The notes beneath the pieces were generated by a model that saw nothing but the letters and a program-made list of their open reading frames with translations, was not told the origin of the DNA and made no database searches. A stretch of DNA of 64,000 nt from Podarcis bocagei (taxonomy: Eukaryota), in the NCBI GenBank assembly GCA_964188305.1, contig OZ076889.1; one strand, written 5' to 3'. The position numbers were made by a program, and so were the translations under genes. The number at the start of each line of letters is the position of its first letter. Position 1 is the stretch's first letter. Below are positions 20,965 to 38,300 of this stretch, piece after piece.

Positions 20965-21460
20965 AGCTCCAAGGGTTTCTGAAGAAAGCTGATCATCTAG
21001 ATCCATTTCAATCTGGCTTCAAGCCTGGTTATGGGACAGAGATGGTTTGGGTTGCCTTGGTGGATGACTTACGTCGGGAACTAGAGTAGGTGTGGGTGGT
21101 CCTTGTTGGATCTGCTGGACCTCTTGGTGACTTTTGATACCATGGACCATGATGTCCTTCTGGGCCACCTTGCCATAGCTGTCAACGTTTCCTTTTTTTT
21201 TAAGGGAAATTCCCTTATTCCGAATAGGATTCCTCACAAGAAAAGGGAAAAGTTGACAGCTATGCACCTTGCTGGGATGGAACTTGGAGGCACTGTTTTA
21301 CTCACTCCTTTCCTGTAGAGGCAAGTCCTTCAGGGTTCTGTTCTGCCCCCCATGCTATTTAATACTTACATGAAACCACTGGGAGAGGTTGACAGGAATT
21401 TGGCTATTTGGTGTCACCAGTACGCTGATGACACCCAACTCTACTTTTCCTTTCCACCTT
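20965..21460 (+). mobile_element. decayed L2 LINE reverse-transcriptase fragment
   Basis: Motifs DPFQSGFKPGYGTE, LLDL..TFDTMDH, QGSVLPPMLFNTYMKPL and HQYADDTQLY, with deletions. Confidence 0.85.
21174..21264. mobile_element. 91-bp hAT-type MITE nested in the L2 fragment
   Basis: TIR CATAGCTGTCAAC...GTTGACAGCTATG; perfect 8-bp TSD CACCTTGC. Confidence 0.9.
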
Positions 21461-22904
21461 ATTCCAGAATGATACTATTAGAAAATAATATAGCAAGCTA
21501 ACAGCACATAGCAGGACAAAAATGTCCCTTATTTCAGAACACTCAACATTAGCTTCTAGAGCAAGCATTCCTCACCTTTTTGGATACTTGAGCATATTTG
21601 CAAACCAGAAAAACTGTCATGGACACCATGTGCACACCGCAACAGAGCACACACTGTAACCTATTATATTGGCTACAATAGAATGCTTCTTTCAAGTCTA
21701 ATTTTGAAAAGGGGAGAGGACCCTGTGGGTGCCAAGGAGAGCCTCTGTGGCCCCATGGGCACCATGTTGCTGATCCTTGTCCGTAAATAACAAATTTCAT
21801 GACTCTCTGGTGTACCTTGAAGCTCCACATATAGCTGACTTTTGGCTTCTTTCGTGTAACCGAACTGAGACCAATCTGTATTCGAGACACATAATTGCCT
21901 GAGAAATTGTGTATGTACGTTAGAGTTCAAAAGGTTAAACAATTCTTATTAATAGAGTGCCAGACTCACTGATGCATAAACACTAATAATGTTTCTTGGC
22001 TCATTATGTTCAGAAGTGTCCATAGCAGCTATTTACCCCTTGCTACATTGTGTGTCTTTTTGGCATGGCATATTAAAGGGAAGAGAGTGCTATAGGACCC
22101 TGGCAAGCACAGTTCAGTGTAGTCAATTTTTATTATTTTGCAGTAAACTGTATAATTATTACCTTTAATGACATTTAGGCAATTAAGGATGCCATCTTAT
22201 ACCCACTTATCTGGAGAAAGTCTCACTGAAATCACTGCCTGGGTATGTATGGATGGTATAGATTGCGCTGAAATGCCGCACACCTGTTGCACATATATGC
22301 GGGCAGAACCTCTGTTCGGCTGAGTAGGATTTATTTTCGAGTAAATGTGCATCGAGAACAGACTGCAAAACAAATCAAAGGGAAGTTATTGCTATGGCAT
22401 GCAGTACAAGTATTGCGAGTGTGCACAGCAAGATGAGAAACAAATTAGGTATGGGGGTACACAATTCTTCATAGATGAAGAAAAGCAATCTAGTATCCAG
22501 GCAAATCGGCAGAAGTTTAAAAGCTGTTTGATTAAAGAGGTCTATTCTGAACGTGATACTTGCATTAGTCACTATGATTCTGTTCAGCCCTGTAACTAAA
22601 AATCAAATGTGGACGCATTCCCCCCCCCCCCCAGTATCTATGGCTTACTGTTACTACACAAATATGCAGGTTACTGGAGAGGAGCTCATAGTTGCTTTGC
22701 TCCTCCCCAGTTCTTTTTACTCCTGCACCACACTGGGCTCAGTATATTGTGTTTTGTCTAGGATTGCTGTATCTTGAAGAAGATAAAAGAGGACAGCCCA
22801 AGCCAGAGAAAGAGGTGTGTGGGCAGGCAGGGACGCTGCGCCTGTACGCCTCTTTCCCCAACTCGGGCTGGCAGTAGTGCGCAGAGCAGCCTGAGCCCAA
22901 GCTT

Positions 22905-23140
22905 TGGATTTTGGATTTGATATCCCGCTTTAGAACTACCCGAAGGAGTCTCAAAGCGGCTAACATTCTCCTTGCCTTCCTACCCCACAACAAACACTCT
23001 GTAGGTGAGTGGGGCTGAAATACTTCAGAGAAGTGTGACTAGCCCAAGGTCACCCAGCAGCTGCATGTGGAGGAGTGGAGATGCGAACCCAGTTCACCAG
23101 ATTACGAGTCTACTGCTCTTAACCACTACACCACACTGGC
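22905..23140 (-). mobile_element. tRNA-derived squamate SINE (Squam2-like)
   Basis: Minus strand begins GCCAGTGTGGTGTAGTGGTTAAGAGC (A box) ... GGGTTCGCATC (B box) and ends in short AAATCC repeats. Confidence 0.75.
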
Positions 23141-23160
23141 TAGCTTGAAATATGGAGGCG

Positions 23161-23446
23161 TGAAATATGCTCAGAGTCGAGAGTGGATTTCATGCTCTTT
23201 ATTCAGCTCATAGTGGTGAGGAGGAATGAAAGTTCCCCCACAATATCTGCTTTATATACATTATTTACACAATGGGCTGCACGTGATTGGCTAATTCTGG
23301 GATTCTCCTGTAGGCCAATCAGGTTGTGGATTCACTTCCACCTGGAGCTGGATTGGGTGGCTCCTGCGGACCAATCATACTGCTGCATTGTTCGAGGACC
23401 AATCATACTGTTGCATTTTGGATCCTATGCAACTCAGTGCGTAACA
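23161..23446 (-). mobile_element. solo LTR (same family as 32456-32778)
   Basis: TG...CA termini, repeated CCAAT boxes, TATATAAAG and AATAAA on the minus strand; clear homology to 32456-32778. Confidence 0.8.
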
Positions 23447-24442
23447 GGGCAGGACCATAGCTCCTACCTGATCTTCACTGCGACAGCCTCACTCTGCTGT
23501 GGCGCTTCCACTTCCGGGGCACAGCGCCTCCCAAGCATCATCTGCTACTAGAGGCAGCTGTTCCACTCTTCCAACTGGTAGAGCCAGCCCTGGTGTCCAG
23601 CAGTCAAAAAGAGGCCATTTTAATCCCTACAATGGAAAGCCAGTTTCTGCCTCCCTCAACATATCTACATTTTACCAATGTCTTTATTCAACACAGAAGT
23701 AAACAAGACAGGTTCTGCTAGGAATTGGACAAATAAAAAGTATGACACACTGACCTATTTAGTATTTAAAGGGCTAAATTAGAATTCTGCTTAATTATCG
23801 TTTTTCAAAAATGTACCTGGGCTAATGTTATTTTTAATTTAATCTTTTTGTTGTTTAACCAGCCATTTGATAGCTGTTTTTTCATGAGCAGCTTTTCGGG
23901 GAGTGGCCGCAGCTGTAAGTGAATGGTGGGGCAGATTGTAGGTCTTTTCCATACACTCAGCATGCTTAAGACCCATGTAACCTGCATTGTTCACACACAG
24001 CACACATGGGACTGTATCAGAAGAGTGGCTGCCATTCAGCTCTGACTGCATGTGAAAGATATCTGAGTGTGACAAGTACATTGAGCCTCTCAAAAGCATA
24101 TTCTGGGTTGTCCTGTGGGTCTCTGACTATAGAGTGCATTGAGAAATCAAAAGCAATCAGCCCCTTATAATGGAAGCTCAGCTGCTGGGGGTGGGTGAGT
24201 ACAGTGAGCTGAACTCCAGTAGGTAGTCTATGGAAATGAGTTAGAATGCAACCCACAGCCTCATTATGTTAACTGCAAATTAACTTAACAGCTTTGTTTA
24301 AACCTCAGCTATTTCAAATAAAGGAAAGATGAACTAGGGGCTGTGTGACAAGTTTTTGAGAGTTGAGTTTCATAGGCAGCATATAATATACCAGCCTTCA
24401 TTATTCTGGTTCCCTCCAGGATCCTGGTGCATGTGAGATTAT

Positions 24443-24566
24443 TACAACCTTTGCCAACCCCCTCCAGATGTTTTGGACTACAATTTCCCCCAGTCCCAAC
24501 CAGCACTGACTGGGGCTGATGAGAGTTGTACTCCAAAACATCTGGAAGGTGTTGGCAAAGGCTGCA
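24443..24566. mobile_element. palindromic non-autonomous DNA element (MITE)
   Basis: CCTTTGCCAAC...TCCAGATGTTTTGGA ... TCCAAAACATCTGGA...GTTGGCAAAGG inverted arms. Confidence 0.75.
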
Positions 24567-24959
24567 GTATGGTCACATGCAGAATATGGATTGGACAAAG
24601 TGTACTCTGCCTACTGCTTACACGTAATCTAAAAGTATCAAAAGATCAGCAAGCCTATCCACACCCCAATACAGGAGAACCTTTGTGCAGTCCTCAACAG
24701 ATCAAGGGGTGCCCTCTGAGCAGGACCTTGGGGGCATGGCTCTACTTAGCAAAGCAAACACCCAAATTTACCAAGGCTGAGTTGATTAACTTTGAGGTAA
24801 GTGAAGTAATATTCATAAGCTGTTCCTCCTATGGCAATTAAGTCCAGAATTTAAAGCTACCTAGTTGTATGAGTGGGGGGAAACAGGCACAACGTAAAAG
24901 GCACCCAAATAGTGGATCAAGCTAGTCAGCCAAGTCATACAAGAAGCCTGTGTACCCTA

Positions 24960-25397
24960 CGTGTAGAACCTTACATTTGTCCCTTTTTAATTTCATTTTG
25001 TTAATTTGGGCTCAGTTCTCCATTCTGTTAAGGTCATACTGAACCCTGATTATATGTTCTGTGCCATTAGCTACCCCTCACAGTTTGGTGTCATGTGCAC
25101 ATTTGATGAGCATTCCCTCAATTCCTTCATCCAAGTCACTAATAAAGATGTTGAACAACAGGCCCAGGACGGAACCCTGCAGCACTCTACTTGCCACTTT
25201 TTTCTGTATGATGAGGAACCATTAATGAGCACTCTTTGGGTTTGGTCAGTCAACCAACTACAAATCCACCTAACAGGTTACCTTGTCCCATTTTACCAGC
25301 TTCTCCACAAGAATATCATGGAAGACTTTGTCAAAAGCCTTAATGAAATCAAGATACACTACATCCACAGCATTGCACTGATCCATCCAGCTTGTAA

Positions 25398-25400
<3 letters not shown>
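24960..25400 (-). mobile_element. decayed CR1 LINE fragment (left part; interrupted by microsatellite and PLE insertion)
   Basis: Minus strand shows CR1 RT remnants ([11 protein letters not shown]; degenerate FADDT as LIKCAHDT); resumes at ~31994. Confidence 0.8.

Positions 25401-25455
<55 letters not shown>
25400..25455. repeat. (TC)n(TA)n microsatellite, left flank of PLE insertion
   Basis: Seen directly. Confidence 0.95.
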
Positions 25456-25504
25456 GGTTTTGGTGTCTTCGGGTGTCTTCCCGTGTAAGAGTTGGGGTGT
25501 CTAG

Positions 25505-25542
25505 GCGACGTTTCGACGAGGTCTCACTCGTCATCTTCAGGC
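25505..25542 (-). ncRNA. minimal type I hammerhead ribozyme motif (3' pLTR, copy 1)
   Basis: Reverse complement of CUGAAGA-U-GACGAG-ugagac-CUCGUC-GAAA-CGUC. Confidence 0.75.
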
Positions 25543-28499
25543 TGGTGCTTTCGGCTTCTTGTTACTGGAACAGAGCAGGATCTCAGTGTTTGAGTTCCTA
25601 TAAATACTGTTGAGGGGGTGTGGTGTATAGCCTCCAACGTTCTGGGCAGAGAGGAAGTTCCCAGGTTAGTGTGTCTTTTCTTCTTTTGTTCATTAATTAC
25701 TTGAGGGATATCTTGAGTGATTTCTTGAGTGATATTCTGAGTACCACTTAGGAGGGTCATTAGGTGTGGATTAGTTGCTAAAGCTTTCGTGTCTTGACCT
25801 CTTGACCTTGTGAAGAGTTTTTTCTGAGAAGATGGCTGTACTGCACTTAGTTGTGCTCTGGCTTGGCTTCGTGTATAGGGGCGAGCTGTGGTTTTGTGCC
25901 CTGTGCCAGCCAGATCTGTGTAGGGATTGCAGGGGGGTGCAGCATCCGGAGGTGCCACTATGGTTTGGCTACTGGATGGTGTCTGTAATTTATCTGTGGA
26001 GAGGGTCTGGGTTTGGGTCTGGTGTGGTTGATTGGAGATGGCGTTCTGTGTGCCTCTGGTTCTGGTGTCGGTTTTTGTGGGGAGGGCTATTTTCCAGATG
26101 TCTGGCAGGCGGGACGTATCGTCACGCTTGTTCATGTTGTGAGGGTGTTTCTCTATCTCGATGGCTTCCATGATTATTCTCTTGTGGTGGTGTTCCATGT
26201 TAAAGAGCAATTTGGAATCTGAAAAATTAATTTCGTGTCCTGTTTCTTTCATGTGTTGGTAAAGAGAGGAAGTTTTTTCTTCTTTTTTGACGGCATTCTT
26301 GTGTTCTGCGATACGTGCATTTATTCGTCTGTTTGTTTGTCCAATGTACGTGGCTGGGCAGACTTTGCAGGGTATTTCATAGACCCCTTGGTTTTCTAAC
26401 TGGATTTTATCTTTGGGGTTTCTGAGGATATTGGCTATTTTTTGGTTGGTGCAAAAGGCTGTTTTGATATTGTGTTTATGGAGGATTTTGCTAATTTTAT
26501 CTGTAGTGCCCTTGATATAAGGAAGGAGGGCCATGCCATTGTTTTCTTCTGTGTCTTGCTTTTTGGGGGGTGTTTCTTTTTGGATTAGCTTCGTAACCCT
26601 GTTTTGCTGGTATCCGTTGGCGATTAACACATTTGAAAGATTCTGTAACTCAGTTGTCAAGTGGTCTTTGTCAGCCAGGCGTTTGGTTCTGGAGATGAGA
26701 GTCTTGGCTACGGAGTTTATTTGTGCAGGGTGGTGGTGTGATTGTGCATGTAAGTAGCGGTTGGTGTGTGTTTTTTTCCGGTAGATAGTGTGTCCTAGGG
26801 AGCCATCAGGTTTTTTGTAGATTAGGACGTCAAGGAAGGGAAGTTGGTTGTTGGCTTCTATTTCCATAGTGAATTGTATTTTGGGGTGTAGGCTGTTGAG
26901 ATGTGTGAGGAAGCTATCTAGTTTTTTCTTCCCGTGTGGCCAAATTACAAAGGTGTCGTCAACATACCTGAGCCAAAGTTTGGGTTTGTGTTCTGACTTG
27001 TCTAAAGCATTGGTTTCAAAGTGTTCCATGTACAGATTTGCGATGACCGGTGAGAGGGGTGATCCCATAGGTGCTCCTTCTATCTGTTTGTATCTTTGTC
27101 CATTGTGGATGAAGTACGTGTTGGTTAGGCAGTGGTTGGTCAGGTCCAGGATGTATTCGGGGGGATTGTATTTGTTTTGAATGGCTGTCAAGGCTTCATT
27201 AATGGGCACTTGTGTGAAGAGAGATACAACATCGAAGCTCACAAGTAGGTCGTCGGGATGTAGGTTTTGCTTCTTTATTGTTTCTATGAACTGGAAGGAG
27301 TTTGTAACGTGTGAAGCGATAGATTCTGCATAGGGCTGAAGTTGCTTAGCGAGAAATTTAGCGAGATTTTGTAGAGGTGAGCCTATGGAGCTGACTATTG
27401 GTCTGAGTGGTGTTCCTTCTTTGTGTATCTTGGGGAGACCGTAGAGTTTGGGGCATCTGGATGATTTTTCTCTGGGGATGATTCTTAGCTGGATTTCTTC
27501 ACTGATAGGAGAGGCTTTTATTTTGGATTTGGTGGTTTTTTCCAGATAGGTGGTGGGATCTGTTTTTATAGGTTGGTAGGTAGGGTCTTGGAGTAGATTT
27601 GATAGTTTTGCTTGGTAGTCCGATGTGTTCATCACAACAGTGGCATTACCTTTGTCTGCTGGGAGAATGATTATGTTGTTGTCTTTCCTCAGGTTGGTGA
27701 GTGCTTTCTGTTCTTCTTTGTGTAAATTGCTTCTGGGTGGTTTGCTGGAGCAGAGGATGTTGGTGACTTCAAGTCTGATTTTATTGGCTTCATCTGGGTT
27801 GATTTTGGTTAGGCTAGCTTCGACTCCGCATATGATGTTTTCCGTGGGGATGCGTCTCGGGGCGACTGCAAAGTTGAAACCTTTGGAGAGTACTTTGGTT
27901 TCAGTTGAGGTGAGGATCCTGTCTGATATGTTATGTACTGTTTGTTTCATGGGTTGTTGTGGAGGGTGGCTGGGCTTCTGGCGTTTCTCTAGTTTGTGGA
28001 GTTTGTTGGTGTGTGTGTCTGTCTTATGTGTGGACTCCGTTTCAGCTCTCCAAACGGCTAGTTGTTTGCATTTGTCCCAGAGTGCAGGGTGGATTTTGTT
28101 ACAAAGTTTGAGGTGAAGAGTGAGCAGATCTTTGTTGGTTTGGTTTAGTAGGTATCTTTTCTTATGTAGTTCGTTTCTGATTAGGGATAGTTCAGTTCGT
28201 TTCAGGATCCTTTCGGTAGCTGGGGTTTTAGAATGGAATTTAAGTTGGAAGCATGTGGGAATTAAGTTGTTGTCTCGGCAGTTGCGTAGGAACAAGAGAT
28301 CACATAAGATGGTGGCTCTTCGGATTTCTAGTTTCTCGTAGGTTCTTGTCAGCTGGAAGGTTTCCTCCCCGTAGAGGTGAGATATTTGCTTTCGTAGATT
28401 TTCACGGGTACAGGAATGCAGGTTTTGGTGTCTTCGGGTGTCTTCCCGTGTAAGAGTTGGGGTGTCTAGGCGACGTTTCGACGAGGTCTCACTCGTCAT
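25524..28499 (-). CDS. PLE polyprotein: reverse transcriptase + GIY-YIG endonuclease, 991 aa
   Basis: FLRNC..NNLIP N-terminal motif, PADKGN, LVSFDVVSLFT, GAPMGSPLSP, RYVDDTF, LPFLDV, GVYEIPCKVC..TYIGQT.R. Confidence 0.95.
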   Translation of the reverse strand: MTSETSSKRRLDTPTLTREDTRRHQNLHSCTRENLRKQISHLYGEETFQLTRTYEKLEIRRATILCDLLFLRNCRDNNLIPTCFQLKFHSKTPATERILKRTELSLIRNELHKKRYLLNQTNKDLLTLHLKLCNKIHPALWDKCKQLAVWRAETESTHKTDTHTNKLHKLEKRQKPSHPPQQPMKQTVHNISDRILTSTETKVLSKGFNFAVAPRRIPTENIICGVEASLTKINPDEANKIRLEVTNILCSSKPPRSNLHKEEQKALTNLRKDNNIIILPADKGNATVVMNTSDYQAKLSNLLQDPTYQPIKTDPTTYLEKTTKSKIKASPISEEIQLRIIPREKSSRCPKLYGLPKIHKEGTPLRPIVSSIGSPLQNLAKFLAKQLQPYAESIASHVTNSFQFIETIKKQNLHPDDLLVSFDVVSLFTQVPINEALTAIQNKYNPPEYILDLTNHCLTNTYFIHNGQRYKQIEGAPMGSPLSPVIANLYMEHFETNALDKSEHKPKLWLRYVDDTFVIWPHGKKKLDSFLTHLNSLHPKIQFTMEIEANNQLPFLDVLIYKKPDGSLGHTIYRKKTHTNRYLHAQSHHHPAQINSVAKTLISRTKRLADKDHLTTELQNLSNVLIANGYQQNRVTKLIQKETPPKKQDTEENNGMALLPYIKGTTDKISKILHKHNIKTAFCTNQKIANILRNPKDKIQLENQGVYEIPCKVCPATYIGQTNRRINARIAEHKNAVKKEEKTSSLYQHMKETGHEINFSDSKLLFNMEHHHKRIIMEAIEIEKHPHNMNKRDDTSRLPDIWKIALPTKTDTRTRGTQNAISNQPHQTQTQTLSTDKLQTPSSSQTIVAPPDAAPPCNPYTDLAGTGHKTTARPYTRSQARAQLSAVQPSSQKKLFTRSRGQDTKALATNPHLMTLLSGTQNITQEITQDIPQVINEQKKKRHTNLGTSSLPRTLEAIHHTPSTVFIGTQTLRSCSVPVTRSRKHQPEDDE

Positions 28500-28507
28500 C
28501 TTCAGGC
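28470..28507 (-). ncRNA. minimal type I hammerhead ribozyme motif (5' pLTR, copy 1)
   Basis: Same motif; overlaps the ORF start codon at 28499. Confidence 0.75.
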
Positions 28508-28704
28508 TGGTGCTTTCGGCTTCTTGTTACTGGAACAGAGCAGGATCTCAGTGTTTGAGTTCCTATAAATACTGTTGAGGGGGTGTGGTGTATAGCCTCC
28601 AACGTTCTGGGCAGAGAGGAAGTTCCCAGGTTAGTGTGTCTTTTCTTCTTTTGTTCATTAATTACTTGAGGGATATCTTGAGTGATTTCTTGAGTGATAT
28701 TCTG

Positions 28705-28775
28705 AGTACCACTTAGGAGGGTCATTAGGTGTGGATTAAACTCAGTACCACTTAGGAGGGTCATTAGGTGTGGAT
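28705..28775 (+). repeat. 32-bp direct duplication at the inversion junction
   Basis: AGTACCACTTAGGAGGGTCATTAGGTGTGGAT at 28705-28736 and 28744-28775. Confidence 0.9.
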
Positions 28776-28832
28776 AGGAACTCAAACACTGAGATCCTGC
28801 TCTGTTCCAGTAACAAGAAGCCGAAAGCACCA

Positions 28833-28870
28833 GCCTGAAGATGACGAGTGAGACCTCGTCGAAACGTCGC
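28833..28870 (+). ncRNA. minimal type I hammerhead ribozyme motif (5' pLTR, copy 2)
   Basis: CUGAAGA 28835-28841; 6-bp stem II GACGAG/CUCGUC; GAAA 28861-28864; palindromic ACGU in place of stem III; predicted GUC cleavage after 28868. Stem I is weak (GC/GC). Confidence 0.75.
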
Positions 28871-31816
28871 CTAGACACCCCAACTCTTACACGGGAAGAC
28901 ACCCGAAGACACCAAAACCTGCATTCCTGTACCCGTGAAAATCTACGAAAGCAAATATCTCACCTCTACGGGGAGGAAACCTTCCAGCTGACAAGAACCT
29001 ACGAGAAACTAGAAATCCGAAGAGCCACCATCTTATGTGATCTCTTGTTCCTACGCAACTGCCGAGACAACAACTTAATTCCCACATGCTTCCAACTTAA
29101 ATTCCATTCTAAAACCCCAGCTACCGAAAGGATCCTGAAACGAACTGAACTATCCCTAATCAGAAACGAACTACATAAGAAAAGATACCTACTAAACCAA
29201 ACCAACAAAGATCTGCTCACTCTTCACCTCAAACTTTGTAACAAAATCCACCCTGCACTCTGGGACAAATGCAAACAACTAGCCGTTTGGAGAGCTGAAA
29301 CGGAGTCCGCACATAAGACAGACACACACACCAACAAACTCCACAAACTAGAGAAACGCCAGAAGCCCAGCCACCCTCCACAACAACCCATGAAACAAAC
29401 AGTACATAACATATCAGACAGGATCCTCACCTCAACTGAAACCAAAGTACTCTCCAAAGGTTTCAACTTTGCAGTCGCCCCGAGACGCATCCCCACGGAA
29501 AACATCATATGCGGAGTCGAAGCTAGCCTAACCAAAATCAACCCAGATGAAGCCAATAAAATCAGACTTGAAGTCACCAACATCCTCTGCTCCAGCAAAC
29601 CACCCAGAAGCAATTTACACAAAGAAGAACAGAAAGCACTCACCAACCTGAGGAAAGACAACAACATAATCATTCTCCCAGCAGACAAAGGTAATGCCAC
29701 TGTTGTGATGAACACATCGGACTACCAAGCAAAACTATCAAATCTACTCCAAGACCCTACCTACCAACCTATAAAAACAGATCCCACCACCTATCTGGAA
29801 AAAACCACCAAATCCAAAATAAAAGCCTCTCCTATCAGTGAAGAAATCCAGCTAAGAATCATCCCCAGAGAAAAATCATCCAGATGCCCCAAACTCTACG
29901 GTCTCCCCAAGATACACAAAGAAGGAACACCACTCAGACCAATAGTCAGCTCCATAGGCTCACCTCTACAAAATCTCGCTAAATTTCTCGCTAAGCAACT
30001 TCAGCCCTATGCAGAATCTATCGCTTCACACGTTACAAACTCCTTCCAGTTCATAGAAACAATAAAGAAGCAAAACCTACATCCCGACGACCTACTTGTG
30101 AGCTTCGATGTTGTATCTCTCTTCACACAAGTGCCCATTAATGAAGCCTTGACAGCCATTCAAAACAAATACAATCCCCCCGAATACATCCTGGACCTGA
30201 CCAACCACTGCCTAACCAACACGTACTTCATCCACAATGGACAAAGATACAAACAGATAGAAGGAGCACCTATGGGATCACCCCTCTCACCGGTCATCGC
30301 AAATCTGTACATGGAACACTTTGAAACCAATGCTTTAGACAAGTCAGAACACAAACCCAAACTTTGGCTCAGGTATGTTGACGACACCTTTGTAATTTGG
30401 CCACACGGGAAGAAAAAACTAGATAGCTTCCTCACACATCTCAACAGCCTACACCCCAAAATACAATTCACTATGGAAATAGAAGCCAACAACCAACTTC
30501 CCTTCCTTGACGTCCTAATCTACAAAAAACCTGATGGCTCCCTAGGACACACTATCTACCGGAAAAAAACACACACCAACCGCTACTTACATGCACAATC
30601 ACACCACCACCCTGCACAAATAAACTCCGTAGCCAAGACTCTCATCTCCAGAACCAAACGCCTGGCTGACAAAGACCACTTGACAACTGAGTTACAGAAT
30701 CTTTCAAATGTGTTAATCGCCAATGGATACCAGCAAAACAGGGTTACGAAGCTAATCCAAAAAGAAACACCCCCCAAAAAGCAAGACACAGAAGAAAACA
30801 ATGGCATGGCCCTCCTTCCTTATATCAAGGGCACTACAGATAAAATTAGCAAAATCCTCCATAAACACAATATCAAAACAGCCTTTTGCACCAACCAAAA
30901 AATAGCCAATATCCTCAGAAACCCCAAAGATAAAATCCAGTTAGAAAACCAAGGGGTCTATGAAATACCCTGCAAAGTCTGCCCAGCCACGTACATTGGA
31001 CAAACAAACAGACGAATAAATGCACGTATCGCAGAACACAAGAATGCCGTCAAAAAAGAAGAAAAAACTTCCTCTCTTTACCAACACATGAAAGAAACAG
31101 GACACGAAATTAATTTTTCAGATTCCAAATTGCTCTTTAACATGGAACACCACCACAAGAGAATAATCATGGAAGCCATCGAGATAGAGAAACACCCTCA
31201 CAACATGAACAAGCGTGACGATACGTCCCGCCTGCCAGACATCTGGAAAATAGCCCTCCCCACAAAAACCGACACCAGAACCAGAGGCACACAGAACGCC
31301 ATCTCCAATCAACCACACCAGACCCAAACCCAGACCCTCTCCACAGATAAATTACAGACACCATCCAGTAGCCAAACCATAGTGGCACCTCCGGATGCTG
31401 CACCCCCCTGCAATCCCTACACAGATCTGGCTGGCACAGGGCACAAAACCACAGCTCGCCCCTATACACGAAGCCAAGCCAGAGCACAACTAAGTGCAGT
31501 ACAGCCATCTTCTCAGAAAAAACTCTTCACAAGGTCAAGAGGTCAAGACACGAAAGCTTTAGCAACTAATCCACACCTAATGACCCTCCTAAGTGGTACT
31601 CAGAATATCACTCAAGAAATCACTCAAGATATCCCTCAAGTAATTAATGAACAAAAGAAGAAAAGACACACTAACCTGGGAACTTCCTCTCTGCCCAGAA
31701 CGTTGGAGGCTATACACCACACCCCCTCAACAGTATTTATAGGAACTCAAACACTGAGATCCTGCTCTGTTCCAGTAACAAGAAGCCGAAAGCACCAGCC
31801 TGAAGATGACGAGTGA
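28841..31816 (+). CDS. PLE polyprotein: reverse transcriptase + GIY-YIG endonuclease, 991 aa
   Basis: Same motifs as copy 1; differs by one residue (ETESAHK versus ETESTHK). Confidence 0.95.
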   Translation: MTSETSSKRRLDTPTLTREDTRRHQNLHSCTRENLRKQISHLYGEETFQLTRTYEKLEIRRATILCDLLFLRNCRDNNLIPTCFQLKFHSKTPATERILKRTELSLIRNELHKKRYLLNQTNKDLLTLHLKLCNKIHPALWDKCKQLAVWRAETESAHKTDTHTNKLHKLEKRQKPSHPPQQPMKQTVHNISDRILTSTETKVLSKGFNFAVAPRRIPTENIICGVEASLTKINPDEANKIRLEVTNILCSSKPPRSNLHKEEQKALTNLRKDNNIIILPADKGNATVVMNTSDYQAKLSNLLQDPTYQPIKTDPTTYLEKTTKSKIKASPISEEIQLRIIPREKSSRCPKLYGLPKIHKEGTPLRPIVSSIGSPLQNLAKFLAKQLQPYAESIASHVTNSFQFIETIKKQNLHPDDLLVSFDVVSLFTQVPINEALTAIQNKYNPPEYILDLTNHCLTNTYFIHNGQRYKQIEGAPMGSPLSPVIANLYMEHFETNALDKSEHKPKLWLRYVDDTFVIWPHGKKKLDSFLTHLNSLHPKIQFTMEIEANNQLPFLDVLIYKKPDGSLGHTIYRKKTHTNRYLHAQSHHHPAQINSVAKTLISRTKRLADKDHLTTELQNLSNVLIANGYQQNRVTKLIQKETPPKKQDTEENNGMALLPYIKGTTDKISKILHKHNIKTAFCTNQKIANILRNPKDKIQLENQGVYEIPCKVCPATYIGQTNRRINARIAEHKNAVKKEEKTSSLYQHMKETGHEINFSDSKLLFNMEHHHKRIIMEAIEIEKHPHNMNKRDDTSRLPDIWKIALPTKTDTRTRGTQNAISNQPHQTQTQTLSTDKLQTPSSSQTIVAPPDAAPPCNPYTDLAGTGHKTTARPYTRSQARAQLSAVQPSSQKKLFTRSRGQDTKALATNPHLMTLLSGTQNITQEITQDIPQVINEQKKKRHTNLGTSSLPRTLEAIHHTPSTVFIGTQTLRSCSVPVTRSRKHQPEDDE

Positions 31817-31835
31817 GACCTCGTCGAAACGTCGC
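31798..31835 (+). ncRNA. minimal type I hammerhead ribozyme motif (3' pLTR, copy 2)
   Basis: Same motif; the ORF stop TGA (31814-31816) lies in loop II; predicted cleavage after 31833. Confidence 0.75.
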
Positions 31836-31916
31836 CTAGACACCCCAACTCTTACACGGGAAGACACCCGAAGACACCAAAACCTGCATTCCTGTACCCG
31901 TGAAAATCTACGAAAG

Positions 31917-31920
<4 letters not shown>

Positions 31921-31993
<73 letters not shown>
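31921..31993. repeat. (TA)n microsatellite, right flank of PLE insertion
   Basis: Seen directly. Confidence 0.95.
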
Positions 31994-31996
<3 letters not shown>

Positions 31997-32092
31997 TTAT
32001 CTAGCATAGCTTATTTTTGAGAAACCCATGGTGGGTCTTAATAATCACAGCATCCCTTTTCTAAATGCTCACAGACCAACTGTTTAATTAAC
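31994..32092 (-). mobile_element. CR1 fragment, continuation of 24960-25400
   Basis: GATTTATCTAGCATAGCTTATTTTTGAGAAACCCATG is the CR1 segment expected directly after ...CTTGTAACACT in this orientation. Confidence 0.7.
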
Positions 32093-32455
32093 TGTTATGT
32101 TGATATCAATTGTATCATTGTCACACATAAAATCCATGATTATGTTCTTTAAAATGTTGTAACTTACTGACAGACCTTTTTTGTGTAAAAATTGACCAAT
32201 AAGTTGTTGCTACTAAATAAAAAGCTGCTGACTTGTATGGGCAGTACTAAGCTAGATGGAACATTGGTCTTATAGCAGCTTCTTAAAATAATGACTTTTG
32301 TTTGCTGTTTCTCATTATGTCAATTACTCTGTGAATAACTTGCTCATTCTCCTGCCCCACAAAAGTAAGTGTCTCTATATGCAATTATTGGAGAGAGGGC
32401 ACCCAGATCTGACATCAGTTAATTGTGTGTGTGTGTGTGTGTGTGTTGGGGGGAG

Positions 32456-32778
32456 TGTTATGTACTGAGTTGAATAGGATCCAAAAGGCAGCAGTCTGAT
32501 TGGTCCTAGAACAATAGGGTCCATAATGCAGCAGTCTGATTGGTCCTAGAACAATGCAGCAGTATGATTGGTCCGCAGGAGCCACCCAATCCAGCTCCAG
32601 GCGGAAGTGAATCCACAACCTGATTGGCCTACAGGAGAATCCCAGAATTAGCCAATCACGTGCAGCCCATTGTGTAAATAATGTATATAAAGCAGATATT
32701 TTGGGGAAACTTTCATTCCTCACTACTATGAGCTGAATAAAGAGCATGAAATCCACACTCGACTCCAAGTATATTTCA
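32456..32778 (+). mobile_element. solo LTR (Gypsy-like)
   Basis: TGTTATG...TTTCA termini; repeated GATTGG units, TATATAAAG and AATAAA. Confidence 0.8.
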
Positions 32779-33816
32779 GGGGGACACACAAACGGACCTC
32801 TCTTCATACAGAGAGAGCCTTCTTTCCGTAATCAGCAGAGATAGATGCTTTGTAACCTTGGTAACACTGGCACAGTTTGTGTGCCAAAAAGGTGCTGCTG
32901 AATTCAAAATGTTTCACAAAAGATTTCAAGCATCAGAGCCAGTTACTGAAAGCACAATGAAACACAGTTTAACTTTTCTCCCACTAAATTGCTGGATGGG
33001 TTTCAGGAGAAAACGAAGCTTAATATGTATGGGAAAAGAAGAGTGATTGGTGTCTTAGAATAATCAAAATATGAAAAATAGATTCAGTTATGACAAAAAA
33101 AAAAAACAGCAACGGTCCATATAGAAAAGAACCTAAACAGCAGCCATGGCATGTCTTTTATTATGACCAACTGAAAGGCACAAAATACTGAGATACCTTT
33201 CTAGTTTCACAGAAGTCTTCCTCATACAGGATGTTAAAGAAGAGAAGGGTAGAAAAATAAACAGGGCCACCCTAATATGTTTTGCTGTGTGAAGCAAGAA
33301 GAAGATGGCTCTTAACTTTGGGAGTTTCTGATGGTCCTAGGAAAGGGATTGTGCCACTGCTACTCTTTAACTGTTTCCACCCTCGTCTTTGATAGTTAAG
33401 GCATTTTCATGTGACCCTCCTCTTCTGTTTCATTTAATCTATGCTGTGCCGCTTTCACTTGGAATTGTTTTACTTGTTTTTATAATTGTATATCAAATGT
33501 TTTACTTCTTTTATTGGTTTTGTTGTTGTTGTAACCCACCCTGCGACCTTACAGTGAAGAATGGGTCAAAACCCTAAAATACATAAAATGCACATGCTAA
33601 TGTTTGTGCTGTTACAGCCCGACCCATTGTGCATTATCATGTGAGTAAGCGCCACTAATTGAAGTAAGTGTGCATAAGACTGTACCATAAATGTAGAAAA
33701 TGCTTTCATTTTTTTATTTCCTAATAACCTTTTGAGATAGGGCATCAATATTCCAAGTTAACATTAGAATAAAGCTAGGAGATACTGAATTGACCCAGGT
33801 CATCCAATGAGTCTAA

Positions 33817-34135
33817 GGCTGCATCTGCACTATAACTTTATCATACTACTGTAAACAGCCATGGCTTCTCCCAGAGAATCCTGAGGACTGTGGTCTGCTA
33901 AGGGTGCTGAAAGTTATTAAGAGATCCAACTTCCCCTCACAGAGCTACAATTCTCTCAGTGGTTTAACAGTCAATCCATCTTCCCAATGAACTTTGGGAA
34001 TTGTAGCTCTGTGAGGTGAATACTGGTCTCCTAACAACTCTGGCACCATTACCAAACTACAGTTCCCAAGATTCTTTGGGAACTTTCAATGTGACTGTTT
34101 AAAGTGGTATGATACCGCTTTAAATACACAGCACA
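33817..34135. mobile_element. degenerate palindromic MITE (possibly Harbinger-type)
   Basis: Long imperfect inverted arms, e.g. CTCACAGAGCTACAATTC / GAATTGTAGCTCTGTGAG. Confidence 0.6.
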
Positions 34136-34554
34136 ACTGAGACTCAAGGCTGATCCAGGATTCTATCGTTTTCAGAATACAAACCCAGCTCTTCCCAACA
34201 TCTGGCCTCTGGAATTTTGGAAGAACACACAGTCTTAGGTTTCATTGGAAATCCTGGTTCCTTGCTTCAGTCATGTTCCTCTTCCATGAATAGAAAACAG
34301 TTTTTTTAAAAATAAATAACAAAGCTTTTCCTTTTCAGAAAGTAAGGTAAAAAAAATCACGGGGACCACAGCGCCACCCACATCACTTCTTTCAGAAAGT
34401 AAAACTAGTAAGACACATGTTTTGTTTTTTTAAAAAAGTAGGAAATAATAAAACTGTCAACAAGTACAGTATGATGAAAAGTATATCTCTTCTAAAGCAA
34501 CAAAAACTGAAGACAAATCATGGTTATCACTCACACAAAAGAAATCAAGGTTGA

Positions 34555-34800
<246 letters not shown>

Positions 34801-35222
34801 TAGGCAGGCTTGAGCTGTGCTATAATTATGCTATAATTTTACTGTATGCGCTAAATGTAGGTAGCTGGAATACAATTGCAAAAGGAAAGAGTTGCAATGG
34901 AAGCATACTGGGCTTTTTGTGGAAAGCACAGGATTGGTGCTTTAATGGTGACAGAAAGACAAAGAGTACCAATAATCCAGATCTGTGATTGGTATTCTCA
35001 ATATATTTAGACTAGTGTAAAGGTTGCTGGAGTAAATTTAGAGAACTTACATCAATGATAGGACCCTCATCAGGGTTTATGAAAACATTAGCTTCAGGCT
35101 TTACATTAAGAAGGACTTCTTAGCTCCAAGAGCAATTTAGCAATGAAACGGGCTGTCTAGAGAGGGAGCTAGATCTCTGGGGTATGTGTGTGTGTTTTTA
35201 AGGATGGACAAGCTATCTAAAC

Positions 35223-35358
35223 CAGGCATCCCCAACCTGCGGCCCTCCAGATGTTTTGGCCTACAACTCCCATGATCCCTAGCTAACAGGACCGATGGTC
35301 AGGGATGGTGGGAATTGTAGTCCAAAACATCTGGAGGGTCGAAGGTTGGGGATGCCTG
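35223..35358. mobile_element. hAT-type palindromic MITE
   Basis: TIR CAGGCATCCCCAACCT...AGGTTGGGGATGCCTG; 8-bp TSD ATCTAAAC/ATCTATAC. Confidence 0.85.
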
Positions 35359-38300
35359 ATCTATACTATCTACAGAAATGGTTAAATGCTGCATAGCCAT
35401 GAGGAGCAGCTTGTACTCTGACTCAGGAGTAGTTGAAGTGGTACAGAGACTGGTGGCCCTCCATATGTTCTTGGACCACAACTCCCATCATTCCTAGCCA
35501 TTGGCTATACATCTGAGACTGTTGGGAGTTGGAGTTCAACAAAATCTGGAGGGAACCAAAGGCAAGCTATACAGAAAATATCAGAAAGCAGCAGCAACTG
35601 CAGATATTTAAATTCCAGCCAACAAGGACTTGAAGGTTTCAGTCCTGCAGGATGGAATGTCTCCTAGCATTACCCACACAAACTACCTGTCACCGTGGTT
35701 GTTTCACGTCTAACAGCAAAGTATTTTGAAGCTAATCTTAGAAACTCAATGAAAGGGAGGAAAGTGTGAAGTTCATCAGATTTCTCAGCAGATGTAACAT
35801 CAGTATGAGCTGGTTGTTATATTAAGCCCGATCAAGGCCAGAGCAAGTATTAACACATTTTCAAGGATTTTGTTTTTTTAAAAAAGCAGTTCTCAGTCAA
35901 GGAAAATTGCCTAATGGAGGCAACCTAATGCACAGCTCGTGTGTCTTTGCTCACTCATCTGATCTGTCACACGTGGGCCTCATTATAACAGAAAATACTT
36001 GACACAGCAATCGCTACACCTGTTAGTAAGCACCACAGCCTGCCCTGACACTATGAGTATGAGAACACTTAACTGGAGGTTCAGTTATTTTGAAATCGAG
36101 GGAGTTTAGGATCAAAGCAGCACCTACTATGGTTGCTATGGGGATACCAGTGAGAATGGCCTTCCTGTGGTGAGTGTTCTCAGCCGTAACATGAAGATGT
36201 GCATGTGGACCTCCACATCTCTGCCAACAGCCAAGGCTGGTGCTAATAGCTCAGCAGTTTACAAGGCATGGAGACCTTGGATGTTTGAAAAGCCCAATGA
36301 ACTGTGATGCAACACACTCTCTAATCCTTCTGGCCCACTCCTCTTGCTGTGGGAGGTGAATTCTGCCTAAACACAGGGCACCATGGCCATTAAGAGGTTG
36401 TTCATTCCCTCTGCAGAAGCCAGCTGCTTGTTTTCCTTTCATTCTGGCACAAACTCTGGCACAAACCTCCTTTGGGTTTCCACATGCTTAGGAAACTGGT
36501 GCAGAGGGTGTGTTAAAAATTGCAAAGAATGAGGGAAATGTATGCTTTCAATGTGGGAAGGGTAGGGAGCCCACTCTAGGTCAAGAGAACCTGGAGCTGC
36601 TTGCACCAGCACCAGGTGAAACACACAAACTCTCCCATGTGGTTCCAATCTATTTCTCCATTGTGCAACTGTAATTTATGTATTATCAACTAAATGTCTG
36701 ACATGTGGCCCCTTCAAGAAAAACAGCTCTGCCCCAGGAAGCCAGCTTTTGGAGATTTGGCTAGAGAAGTAACGTGCAGGCTCCCATGTTTCATCATGAA
36801 TAAAGTTTAAGTTACCATTAATTCAGCTTGTAGTGAGTTCCTTCATAAACTGCAGAAGACAATAGAGCAGCTAGAATAGGAATCACATGCTATGCAGGAC
36901 CATTTTTAGAAGCATCCCTGTAGCACCTATAGTGTGTGTTACAGCTCTCATTTCCAATAATTCATGCTGAGAGGGTCGGGATACCATTCTTACGTTCAAG
37001 CTGAAGAGATGCTTCCTGCTTTTAAAGCCCATAAAAGGTACAACACATAGTCAACATTGTCAGGGTAAAATGCAGGGCCCCTCTACCCATGAAGTAACAA
37101 ATCCAGTTGCTAAAGGTGTTGAAAGCCTTAAATCTCTAGACCTTCTTTCCAGTCCACCAGCCCTTTCTGAAGCTTGGCACCTGTTTTGTTTTAAATCTGC
37201 CTTGACTTAGAACACTTCCCCCCTCTTCCTTTTTAGTATTCCAAACTTTTGTTTTGCTAGCTCAGCTTCACTTGAGGTAACTGGCCATTTTAAAGTTACA
37301 GAAATCTAAACGATGCAGTGTACTGTGATGAAAACAATCACAAATCCTGCAGGGGCATCTCGAAGACTTCAAAAAGTAATTGTGACATGAGTTTTTGTCA
37401 CTTGCATGCCTTTCAACAGAACCATGAAACAATTTGAAAGATGGTAGGCTGATAAGGAAAATTTAGCAGCAGCTTTCCCAATCTCTGCATCTGCAGGTGA
37501 GGAAAAGTTTGCCTGCTAAATTTTGGTCTGGTTTGTTCCACAGCTGCTAAAGGCACACAAAAAAGCCTGCCAGGAAGTGTGGGGTGCCTTGGAGAGAGAG
37601 GTAGATCAATTCCACCCCAGACTCAAACACTGACCAGCTAGGATTATTCTTTTCACTAGAATGGCCATCCTTTGTTTACTTTTCTTTGCAGAACATCCTG
37701 ATTGCCACTTCTCTGTTGCCCTCCTACATTTTTGCAGACCTGATTTGTGAGAATTTTGTTGCTGTAATAAAACACAATTGCACAGCCAGCTTGTAAAGCT
37801 CTTTTGAGGCTCTTAAAGGTTCCTGCACTTTTAATTAAACGTTGCTTGTTTGCAAGCCTAGCCTTTTTTGTTGCTGCCCGGTGAGCATGGGTGAGGGGAG
37901 GAACAGACTATTGATTGCATTTTCAGAAGTCTCTCTTACATTACAATTACACACATACACACACAGGGCTGTGCCCCTGCTCTCATTGCTTGCCAACCCC
38001 AATATGGTAGCCATCACTATAAGCAAATACAAAGTTGTATTTCCCTTGTATAAATACATACAGTAAGGGGGGGTGTTTGAGGAGGGGGAGGAGATAACAT
38101 TTGCTTAGCCTTGCAATCGGCCATATCTGGCCCTGATTCTGTTGATACCAATTTTTCATTCTCTAGCAGGCAATTGCCTTATTTCCTGCTAGATGCAGGT
38201 GGCAGTGACACCCACTGGAAGCAGTATTAAATGTTGTATTTACTGTTCCTAAAATATATCCTAAAAACAGAGATTGGTAGCAAAACACAGCAAACCCTTT

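What the first reader, a model, noticed from the sequence alone, without database searches (positions are those of the whole stretch)
28833..31835. PLE ORF starts and stops inside its own hammerhead ribozyme and is longer than the repeat unit: candidate circRNA-encoded, ribozyme-gated retroelement
Seen: hammerhead motifs recur exactly 2965 nt apart, but the ORF is 2976 nt. The A of the start AUG (28841) is the last base of the CUGAAGA core. The stop UGA (31814-31816) is in loop II of the next hammerhead, read in another frame (AUGACGAGUGA overlap). Predicted cleavage (after 28868 and 31833) falls downstream of the AUG, so a cleaved linear monomer loses its start. The next in-frame Met is residue 184 (29390), behind three out-of-frame AUGs (~29035, 29086, 29269), and starting there would drop the conserved FLxxC..IP N-terminal motif. 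Established: PLE pLTRs carry minimal hammerheads thought to act as dimers, and hammerhead retrozymes form circular RNAs. Inference: full-length protein can come only from uncleaved RNA or from a re-ligated 2965-nt circle that is entirely coding, possibly with stop/restart re-initiation.
Basis: partly seen in the sequence, partly recalled or inferred. Interest (0 to 1): 0.92.

Follow-up and report, generated by a model that had tools for sequence, protein, structure and literature searches.

The report
Penelope retroelement ORF bridging its hammerheads
This is an intact, recently inserted Penelope-like retrotransposon of a lacertid lizard whose single gene starts inside one minimal hammerhead ribozyme and ends inside the next; the start-in-ribozyme layout is already published for an anole relative, the self-overlapping ORF without a UTR is a modest new twist, and nothing yet shows a circular RNA.

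Summary
Minimal hammerhead (HHR) motifs lie 2965 nt apart. The ORF is 2976 nt (991 aa). Its AUG is A9 + bulged U + G10.1 of the ribozyme. Its UGA lies in loop II of the next HHR, and the predicted cut is 28 nt downstream of the AUG.

The element is a Poseidon-clade Penelope-like element (PLE), 45% identical to Anolis PAc. It was inserted as a 100% identical head-to-head pair into a (TA)n microsatellite. Its 3' ends at +79 and +118 match the published PAc reverse-transcription start sites.

The AUG-in-HHR layout, the downstream cut site, protein-assisted cleavage and the lack of cut-site read ends are published for PAc (PMC11167929). A PLE circRNA was proposed in 2014 (PMC4209133).

Two things are not in the papers I could read. 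The 189-codon tail after the endonuclease is kept open (p~0.0002). ORFs reaching or entering the next HHR recur in 7 of 12 sampled families; the sample is biased.

RNA-seq shows low-level transcription and no ends at the cut site, so a circle is neither supported nor excluded. The most likely reading is translation from uncleaved RNA longer than one unit.

The parts
28774..31923 (+). Right PLE copy, 3150 nt = one 2965-nt unit plus 185 nt; spans -67 of the first ORF start to +118 of the second
   Evidence: the repeat finder D2 and I1; sequence
25456..28738 (-). Left PLE copy, mirror image, 3283 nt = one unit plus 318 nt; spans -239 to +79; 100% identical to the right copy where they overlap
   Evidence: the repeat finder I1, I2, D1
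28841..31816 (+). Single ORF, 991 aa plus stop: N-terminal domain, RT (RVT_1, aa 358-536), GIY-YIG endonuclease, 189-aa tail
25524..28499 (-). Identical 991-aa ORF of the left copy
28835..28868 (+). 5' minimal hammerhead: core CUGAAGA, bulged U, 6-bp helix II GACGAG/CUCGUC, loop UGAGAC, GAAACGUC; cut after 28868; AUG = A9-U-G10.1
   Evidence: helix II hairpin appears in the MFE fold
31800..31833 (+). 3' minimal hammerhead, identical; contains the ORF's last codons and the stop (31814-31816) in loop II
28472..28505 (-). 5' hammerhead of the left copy
25507..25540 (-). 3' hammerhead of the left copy
28774..28958 (+). 5' pLTR of the right copy (185-nt direct repeat of 31739-31923)
   Evidence: the repeat finder D2
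31739..31923 (+). 3' pLTR of the right copy
   Evidence: the repeat finder D2
31247..31813 (+). C-terminal tail (aa 803-991): no homology to PAc or to other families' tails, no Pfam match, low complexity, but kept open
31885..31923 (+). 39-nt 'tail' extension, present at the right copy's 3' end (+80..+118) and absent from the left copy, which ends at +79
   Evidence: end points; matches the PAc tail and RT start sites (PMC11167929)
28739..28773 (.). 35-nt junction between the two 5' ends; 28744-28774 is a 31-nt direct duplicate of 28705-28735 (the left copy's 5'-terminal sequence)
   Evidence: read directly from the sequence
25393..25455 (.). (CT)n(TA)n microsatellite abutting the left 3' end (target site)
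31924..31994 (.). (AT)n microsatellite abutting the right 3' end (target site)

Best explanation
A young, apparently intact Poseidon-clade Penelope-like element in a lacertid lizard genome. It was inserted as two cDNAs, each longer than one unit, primed on both strands of a cut (TA)n microsatellite. That gives a head-to-head pair with outward-facing 3' ends at the two known internal RT start sites. Its minimal hammerhead lacks helix III and has a 2-bp helix I, so it needs a dimer or protein and is intrinsically weak. The protein is therefore made from uncleaved transcripts longer than one unit that start upstream of the AUG, either in the pLTR or by read-through. The AUG is built from A9, the conserved bulged U and G10.1, with A6 supplying a purine at -3. 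This is a clade-wide layout. In this family the unit has no UTR. The tail after the endonuclease is kept open up to the next HHR. Because the unit length is 1 mod 3, the frame passes the core and stops at the first UGA, in loop II, which makes the ORF 11 nt longer than the unit. Shown here: the anatomy, homology, covariation, tail openness and transcription. Inferred: which RNA is translated, and why the tail is kept open. One possible reason is that the ribosome then terminates beside the RT-binding and initiation region, which would favour action in cis.
For: Homology: 45% identity to Anolis PAc over aa 33-802, with RVT_1 and GIY-YIG domains. The closest protein is from Podarcis muralis, 95% identical. 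Insertion anatomy: a 100% identical inverted pair flanked by (TA)n on both sides, with 3' ends at +79 and +118. PAc cuts and extends both DNA strands, starts reverse transcription 111-118 nt into the ORF, and has a tail spanning about +85 to +119 (PMC11167929). Reads from other copies also break into (AT)n at +84 and +118. [quoted passage not shown] The AUG = A9-U-G10.1 layout occurs in 8 of 12 families. The conserved N-terminal domain begins about residue 33, with no other in-frame AUG before residue 184. The tail is open with p~0.0002 while the other two frames carry 8 and 11 stops. Against the Podarcis copy the tail has dN/dS about 0.48 versus about 0.15 in the core, and a -1/+1 indel pair 16 nt apart restores the frame. 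RNA-seq shows depth 5-35 across the element and no pile-up of ends at 28868/9 or 31833/4.
Against: No transcription start site is mapped for this family. The right copy has only 67 nt upstream of its AUG, so its promoter is unknown. If the PAc requirement for the first 172 nt of the ORF at the template's 3' end holds here, copies ending at +79 or +118 cannot by themselves give a full-length competent template. A true tandem or a circle would then be needed. HHRs are strongly conserved, with covariation, across families, which argues that cleavage matters at some step this explanation leaves open. RNA depth was low and the reads come from many copies, so the absence of cut-site ends is weak evidence. 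Ligated circles would show no ends either.
Confidence: 0.68

Rival explanations
1. CircRNA reading. A transcript carrying both HHRs is cut at +28 of each. The 2965-nt monomer is ligated by a host tRNA ligase. The circle restores the AUG and the RT-binding region, is translated without a cap all the way round, and also serves as a rolling template for cDNAs longer than one unit.
For: The geometry is consistent. The cleaved linear monomer has no AUG. The unit is 1 mod 3, so a circle encodes the full 991 aa. Both cDNAs are longer than one unit with different permuted ends. The copies end at +79 and +118, short of the +172 that PAc needs at the template's 3' end, and a circle would repair that. 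A circular template for PLEs was proposed in PMC4209133. Animal HHR retrozymes do form circRNAs (PMC7761336). ORFs without a UTR recur in 7 of 12 families.
Against: No unit-length PLE circle is reported in the papers I could search. The PAc HHR is inactive without protein, and HHR mutants insert normally in vitro. Tandem or partial-tandem transcripts explain the same DNA anatomy, and real tandem arrays exist (beetle locus L006). Five of 12 families keep a 90-220-nt 3' UTR, and three place the AUG 60-130 nt downstream of the cut, so a fully coding circle is not a clade requirement. Neither 5' end here lies at the cut. No translation-initiation element is known for such a circle. Helix I is only 2 bp.
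Confidence: 0.12
2. Switch reading, compatible with the best explanation. The AUG/HHR overlap makes translation initiation and ribozyme folding mutually exclusive. Once made, the RT binds the first ~170 nt and helps the HHR to fold and cut. That ends the RNA's life as an mRNA, giving negative feedback or a switch from mRNA to template.
For: Cleavage of the PAc HHR is protein-assisted, and the protein-binding motif lies within +1..+172, next to the HHR. The AUG, helix II and the cut all sit within 28 nt. The layout is conserved in 8 of 12 families.
Against: No in vivo cleavage products were seen for PAc or here. Three families with intact HHRs place the AUG well downstream. Cutting the 3' HHR would detach the RT start site from the ORF, which looks counter-productive for a template.
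Confidence: 0.15
3. The ORF extension is a neutral accident. The tail is untranslated or functionless 3' UTR-like sequence that happens to lack stops in a T-poor strand, so the stop in loop II has no meaning.
For: The tail has no homology between families, no Pfam match and low complexity. PAc and four other families do well with a real 3' UTR. The stop in loop II is specific to this family.
Against: The chance of 189 open codons at this composition is about 0.0002, while the other two frames carry 8 and 11 stops. An unrelated 184-codon tail in L002 gives p<0.0002. A compensated frameshift and an excess of third-position changes against the Podarcis copy point to coding constraint.
Confidence: 0.05

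Closest known systems
Poseidon_Ac / PAc of Anolis carolinensis (Repbase; characterised in Mob DNA 2024, PMC11167929)
   Same: Poseidon-clade PLE, 45% identical over 770 aa. The AUG is A9-U-G10.1 of a minimal HHR and the cut lies 26-28 nt downstream. The 3' ends fall at internal RT start sites about +80 and +118 with a ~35-40-nt tail. Targets are AT-rich. Copies occur as tandem or inverted insertions.
   Different: The PAc unit is 2667 nt (Repbase consensus; 2638 nt between the HHR cores in locus L011) with a 2541-nt CDS and a 126-nt 3' UTR. Here the unit is 2965 nt and the ORF is 2976 nt, with no UTR and the stop inside the next HHR. The 189-aa tail is absent from PAc. Helix I is 2 bp here against 3 bp in PAc.
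Minimal hammerheads of metazoan PLE pLTRs (Cervera & de la Pena 2014, PMC4209133)
   Same: No helix III, palindromic ACGU suited to dimer formation, long helix II (6 bp), short helix I, an unpaired nucleotide between A9 and G10.1, and a G10.1-C11.1 pair.
   Different: That paper does not link the bulged nucleotide to a start codon or the core UGA to a stop codon. Here the bulge is U in 8 of 9 canonical HHR families and forms the AUG.
Animal non-LTR retrozymes and plant LTR retrozymes (HHR-flanked units that form circRNAs)
   Same: Repeated type I HHRs delimit a unit. The 5'-OH and 2',3'-cyclic phosphate ends could be ligated. Retrozymes are thought to be PLE-derived or PLE-mobilised.
   Different: Retrozymes are short (170-1100 nt), non-coding and non-autonomous, and their circles have been shown experimentally. 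This unit is 2965 nt, entirely coding and autonomous, and no circle has been shown.
HDV-like ribozymes at the 5' ends of R2, L1Tc and other non-LTR elements
   Same: A self-cleaving ribozyme sits next to the ORF start of a retrotransposon and is implicated in processing and translation initiation.
   Different: Those ribozymes cut upstream of the start codon and so free a translatable 5' end. Here the cut is 28 nt downstream of the AUG and removes it.
Penelope of Drosophila virilis
   Same: pLTRs in direct or inverted orientation, an optional tail, a GIY-YIG endonuclease with AT preference, and an HHR with a 2-bp helix I.
   Different: Penelope has a transcription start site and an intron in the pLTR 5' UTR and a variant HHR with a bulged helix II. 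No intron or start site is known for the lizard family.

Membership tests
Penelope-like elements, Penelope/Poseidon clade | Single ORF with a PLE-type reverse transcriptase | tested here: met
   RVT_1 E=1.6e-15. 45% identity to PAc across aa 33-802. More than 1300 PLE homologues at E<=1e-20.
Penelope-like elements, Penelope/Poseidon clade | C-terminal GIY-YIG endonuclease | tested here: met
   PF01541 scores 23.2 bits against a cutoff of 22.6 on aa 705-751. The region aligns with the PAc endonuclease, including GVYxIPC..YIGxT..R..EH.
Penelope-like elements, Penelope/Poseidon clade | pLTRs from partial tandem copies, often with an adjacent inverted copy | tested here: met
   Direct repeats of 185 and 300 nt at 2965-nt spacing, and 3111-nt inverted arms at 100% identity. 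A second locus in Podarcis muralis has the same style.
Penelope-like elements, Penelope/Poseidon clade | Optional 30-40-nt tail at one end; AT-rich or microsatellite target | tested here: met
   The ends at +79 and +118 differ by 39 nt. (TA)n lies on both flanks.
Minimal type I hammerhead of PLEs | Core CUGANGA ... GAAA, cleavage triplet GUC, G10.1-C11.1 pair, bulge after A9, palindromic 15.2-16.2 | tested here: met
   CUGAAGA-U-GACGAG..CUCGUC-GAAACGUC.
Minimal type I hammerhead of PLEs | Helices supported by covariation | tested here: met
   Nine families have unrelated helix I and II sequences that all pair, and three carry U3-A8 in place of C3-G8. This is a hand tabulation, not a statistical test.
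Minimal type I hammerhead of PLEs | Self-cleavage, as a dimer or with protein | not testable with these tools
   Shown only for relatives (S. mansoni, D. virilis, PAc) in PMC4209133 and PMC11167929. No read ends at the cut site here.
Retrozyme / HHR-processed circRNA element | HHRs flank a unit | tested here: met
   Two HHRs 2965 nt apart in each copy.
Retrozyme / HHR-processed circRNA element | Non-coding, non-autonomous unit | tested here: not met
   The unit is entirely coding for RT and endonuclease.
Retrozyme / HHR-processed circRNA element | Unit-length circular RNA exists | tested here: inconclusive
   Short reads cannot tell a circle junction from the pLTR or tandem junction already in the genome. 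There were no back-joints and no cut-site ends.

The most novel reading that the evidence does not exclude
In a subset of Poseidon-clade PLEs the functional RNA would be an HHR-processed, re-ligated, unit-length circle that is both mRNA and rolling template. Selection would keep the whole unit open (no UTR, ORF at least as long as the unit, AUG and stop both supplied by the ribozyme). A partial-tandem copy truncated at +79 or +118 could then regenerate a complete coding and RT-binding unit only by circularisation. That would make it the first autonomous retrotransposon encoded by a circRNA.
Probability: 0.1. Interest if true: 0.85.

Novelty: new variant of a known kind. Interest (0 to 1): 0.42.

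Why it matters
The role of hammerheads in Penelope-like elements is an open question. The reviews I read still call it unknown or a mystery (PMC7761336). This element shows the tightest possible coupling between ribozyme and gene, because both the start and the stop of the only ORF lie in hammerheads. The small survey adds two points. The conserved bulged U of PLE minimal HHRs doubles as the middle base of the start codon. Several families also use the next HHR, often its core UGA, as the terminator, and they keep long, non-homologous tails open to reach it. That gives concrete constructs for testing three ideas: whether cleavage, translation and RT loading are coupled; whether termination beside the RT start site promotes action in cis; and whether circles exist. 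If only the ordinary reading holds, the locus is still a clean natural example of the published PAc model, in which both strands prime and reverse transcription starts at two internal sites.

Tried and rejected
Rfam, at E<=1 over 20000-36000, found no hammerhead family. It found only sub-threshold mir-5408/mir-727-like palindromic repeats. The minimal HHR has no helix III, so this says nothing against it.

A metagenome scan with CTGANGATG-N14-24-GAAACGTC returned 120 contigs, but only 2 of 125 motifs lay near a PLE-like ORF. It was useless for widening the survey.

Lunse, Weinberg and Breaker 2017 (PMC5785218) is not held. I therefore could not check whether the start/stop overlap is mentioned there. 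Arkhipova 2006 was not available either.

Read laying gave no pile-up of molecule ends at the cut, no back-joints, and only low depth from many copies. It cannot decide between circle and tandem and does not prove absence of cleavage.

Duplex and dimer folding gave no convincing extension of helix I beyond 2 bp and no informative dimer prediction.

Assembly artefact was considered for the 100% identical 3.1-kb inverted arms and rejected. The end points are asymmetric and match known RT start sites. There is a distinct 35-nt junction. An independent Podarcis muralis locus has the same style.

A start at Met184, or an upstream in-frame start, was rejected. The conserved N-terminal domain begins about aa 33, and an in-frame stop lies 30 nt upstream of the AUG.
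Full report
**1. The observation**

The region was read directly and ORFs were listed.
- A 34-nt motif, CTGAAGA-T-GACGAG-tgagac-CTCGTC-GAAACGTC, occurs four times in the window with no mismatch: 28835 and 31800 on +, 28472-28505 and 25507-25540 on -. None is expected by chance.
- The two + copies are 2965 nt apart.
- The ORF 28841..31816 is 2976 nt (991 aa plus stop).
- A28841 is the last base of the CUGAAGA core. The TGA at 31814-16 lies in the loop of helix II of the next motif.
- GAAACGUC|G puts the cut after 28868 and 31833, which is +28 of the ORF.
- An in-frame stop at 28811-13 means 28841 is the first usable AUG.

**2. What the element is**

- The protein has RVT_1 and a GIY-YIG domain.
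- It is 45% identical to the Anolis carolinensis Poseidon element PAc over aa 33-802.
- The closest database protein is from Podarcis muralis, 95% identical. The host is therefore a lacertid lizard or a close relative.
- The repeat finder shows two copies head to head, 100% identical. The right copy is 28774-31923 (one unit plus 185 nt). The left copy is 25456-28738 on the minus strand (one unit plus 318 nt).
- In ORF coordinates the right copy runs from -67 to +118 of the next unit, and the left copy from -239 to +79.
- Both 3' ends abut a (TA)n microsatellite.
- A 35-nt junction with a 31-nt local duplication joins the two 5' ends.

**3. Comparison with the published PAc work**

The PAc study (Mob DNA 2024, PMC11167929) reports the following.
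- The protein cuts and extends both strands of AT-rich DNA.
- Reverse transcription starts internally, 111-118 nt into the ORF. A second site defines a ~34-nt 'tail' at about +85 to +119.
- The minimal template needs the first 172 nt of the ORF.
- C3G and G8C abolish cleavage, and cleavage needs PAc protein.
- HHR mutants do not affect insertion.
- No RNA-seq reads begin or end at the cut.

The lizard insertion matches this model closely. It has two outward-facing 3' ends at +79 and +118 in a (TA)n target. Reads from other copies of the family break into (AT)n at +84 and +118. The AUG-in-ribozyme layout, and the fact that cleavage would remove the AUG, are therefore already known for a relative. 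A circular RNA template for PLEs was proposed in 2014 (PMC4209133).

**4. Is the hammerhead real?**

Rfam does not detect it, as expected for a minimal HHR without helix III. It fits the description of PLE minimal HHRs in PMC4209133: a long helix II, a short helix I, an unpaired nucleotide after A9, a G10.1-C11.1 pair and a palindromic ACGU.

I collected relatives through the search for homologous proteins and the look-up of encoding contigs. Across nine families with canonical motifs, helix II (5-6 bp) and helix I (2-5 bp) have unrelated sequences that all pair, and three families carry the U3-A8 covariant of C3-G8. Helix I of the window's HHR is only 2 bp, the weakest of the set. That fits a slow ribozyme that needs help.

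**5. What is conserved**

- The AUG as A9-U-G10.1 is present in 8 of 12 families: the window and Podarcis family, PAc, L002, L003, L004, L005, the beetle L006 and the cockroach L009.
- Where the 5' HHR is present, that AUG is the ORF start. In L009 a C17-to-A change in the 5' HHR creates an in-frame TAG.
- A6 of the core supplies an A at -3 of the AUG.
- Three families have a C or A bulge and an AUG 60-130 nt downstream of the cut (L010, L132, L133). A moth family has a degenerate motif.
- The conserved N-terminal protein domain starts about aa 33, so the HHR AUG is the real start.
- The stop in loop II occurs only in the window and Podarcis family. The wider property recurs. The stop lies at +71 of the next unit in L002 (ORF 2985 nt, unit 2911 nt). 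It lies right after the cut site in L003. It is the U4-G5-A6 of the next core in L005, L006 and L133. In the moth family consecutive ORFs overlap by 96 nt.
- Five families, PAc among them, keep a 90-220-nt 3' UTR.
- The sample is small and partly chosen for long ORFs, so the 7 of 12 figure is not a frequency estimate.

**6. Is the long tail selected?**

- Homology to PAc ends at aa 802. The 189-aa tail has no Pfam match and no similarity to other families' tails.
- The tail is nevertheless open with p~0.0002 by composition shuffles, while the other two frames carry 8 and 11 stops. The unrelated 184-codon tail of L002 gives p<0.0002. The shorter tails give 0.02-0.06.
- Against the Podarcis muralis copy, the tail shows dN/dS of about 0.48 (core about 0.15) and an excess of third-position changes. 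A -1/+1 indel pair 16 nt apart restores the frame.
- The tail is therefore most likely translated and kept open, with little constraint on its sequence.
- Once the frame reaches the HHR, the stop position follows from unit length mod 3. With 2 mod 3 the stop is the core UGA. With 1 mod 3 (here) the frame passes the core and ends at the first stop in the +1 frame. With 0 mod 3 consecutive ORFs would fuse; no such case was seen.

**7. RNA evidence**

One bulk RNA-seq run (raw reads, about 12% read), one single-cell run and two contig sets of a related genome were laid on 28560-31923.
- The family is transcribed at low depth (5-35).
- The first mate lies mostly on the minus strand, which means sense RNA if the library is of the usual dUTP type.
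- 43% of the laid reads of the bulk run (X24), and 33% of the single-cell run (X22), run on into unrelated sequence, so part of the signal is host read-through of dispersed copies.
- No pile-up of molecule starts or ends occurs at 28868/9 or 31833/4, and there are no back-joints.
- This agrees with the PAc report but has little power. A circle junction is identical in sequence to the genomic pLTR junction, so short reads cannot show or exclude a circle.

**8. Mechanism**

The best-supported reading (about 0.68) is as follows. The protein is translated from uncleaved transcripts longer than one unit. The HHR is a weak ribozyme that depends on a dimer or on protein, and its role lies at a later, still unknown step. 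The start and stop overlaps reflect an extremely compact unit in which the ribozyme core supplies an AUG in good context and, in several families, a terminator.

Why the tail is kept open is inferred, not shown. One idea is that termination inside the 3' pLTR places the nascent RT beside its binding and initiation region (+1..+172), which would favour action in cis.

The circRNA reading (about 0.12) is logically consistent and has one real argument in its favour. Copies that end at +79 or +118 lack part of the 172-nt region PAc needs at the template's 3' end. A partial tandem could therefore yield a complete template only as a true tandem or after circularisation. There is no direct evidence for a circle, five families keep UTRs, and HHR-dead PAc templates insert normally in vitro.

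A translation/cleavage switch (about 0.15) is compatible with the best reading and is also untested.

**9. Novelty and score**

- Known already: minimal HHRs in PLE pLTRs and the dimer model; the pLTR including the ORF's first codons (PMC3846280); the AUG at stem II with a downstream cut (PAc); the circle hypothesis.
- Not found in any paper I could search: an ORF longer than its unit, a stop inside the next HHR, selection keeping the tails open, the recurrent use of the core UGA as terminator, and the link between the conserved bulged U and the start codon.

Noticed in passing
window 35249-35332, 35465-35545, 24466-24543: Palindromic repeats match the Rfam mir-5408, mir-727 and mir-4650 models on both strands, well below gathering scores (33-54 bits against 81-104). 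They look like copies of a hairpin-forming MITE/SINE-type repeat rather than miRNA genes.
   Followed up: no
window 23161-23428 and 32514-32778: Inverted repeats, 92-96% complementary, lie on either side of the PLE pair but asymmetrically (about 2.0 kb and 0.6 kb away). They are probably two copies of another interspersed repeat. A 40-nt tandem duplication sits at 32473-32552.
   Followed up: no
window 31518 and 31534, compared with L001 (Podarcis muralis): A 1-nt deletion and a 1-nt insertion 16 nt apart distinguish the window copy from the Podarcis copy and from the expressed copies in RNA-seq. The reading frame of the C-terminal tail is restored.
   Followed up: yes
L001 2411-5061 (Podarcis muralis, GCA_964188315.1): A second head-to-head PLE pair of the same family. 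Both copies are 5'-truncated, the arms are 100% identical and only 5 nt apart, and the 3' end lies at +84 next to AT-rich sequence. NCBI annotated it as part of a 735-aa 'uncharacterized protein' gene model with introns.
   Followed up: partly
L009 3450-3484 (Periplaneta americana): In the 5' HHR the cleavage-site C17 is changed to A (GAAACGTA). This both damages the ribozyme and creates an in-frame TAG ten codons after the HHR AUG. The annotated ORF therefore starts at a downstream ATG.
   Followed up: partly
L006 570-8214 (Henosepilachna vigintioctopunctata): A true tandem array with four HHRs at 2608-2609-nt spacing (one unit is 2393 nt). Each ORF runs from A9-U-G of one HHR to the U4-G5-A6 of the next, leaving 2 nt between stop and start.
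   Followed up: partly
L012-L131 (JGI metagenome contigs, many from termite-gut samples): More than 120 exact matches to a minimal-HHR-like pattern lie in contigs without any PLE-like ORF nearby. I did not assess whether they are chance matches, bacterial or phage hammerheads, or solo pLTR fragments.
   Followed up: no
L004 (Logan contig, 2786 nt): The two ends of the contig repeat each other over 30 nt at 2756-nt spacing. It is therefore a unit-length contig that closes on itself, from either a collapsed tandem or a circular molecule. Its ORF keeps a 134-nt UTR.
   Followed up: no
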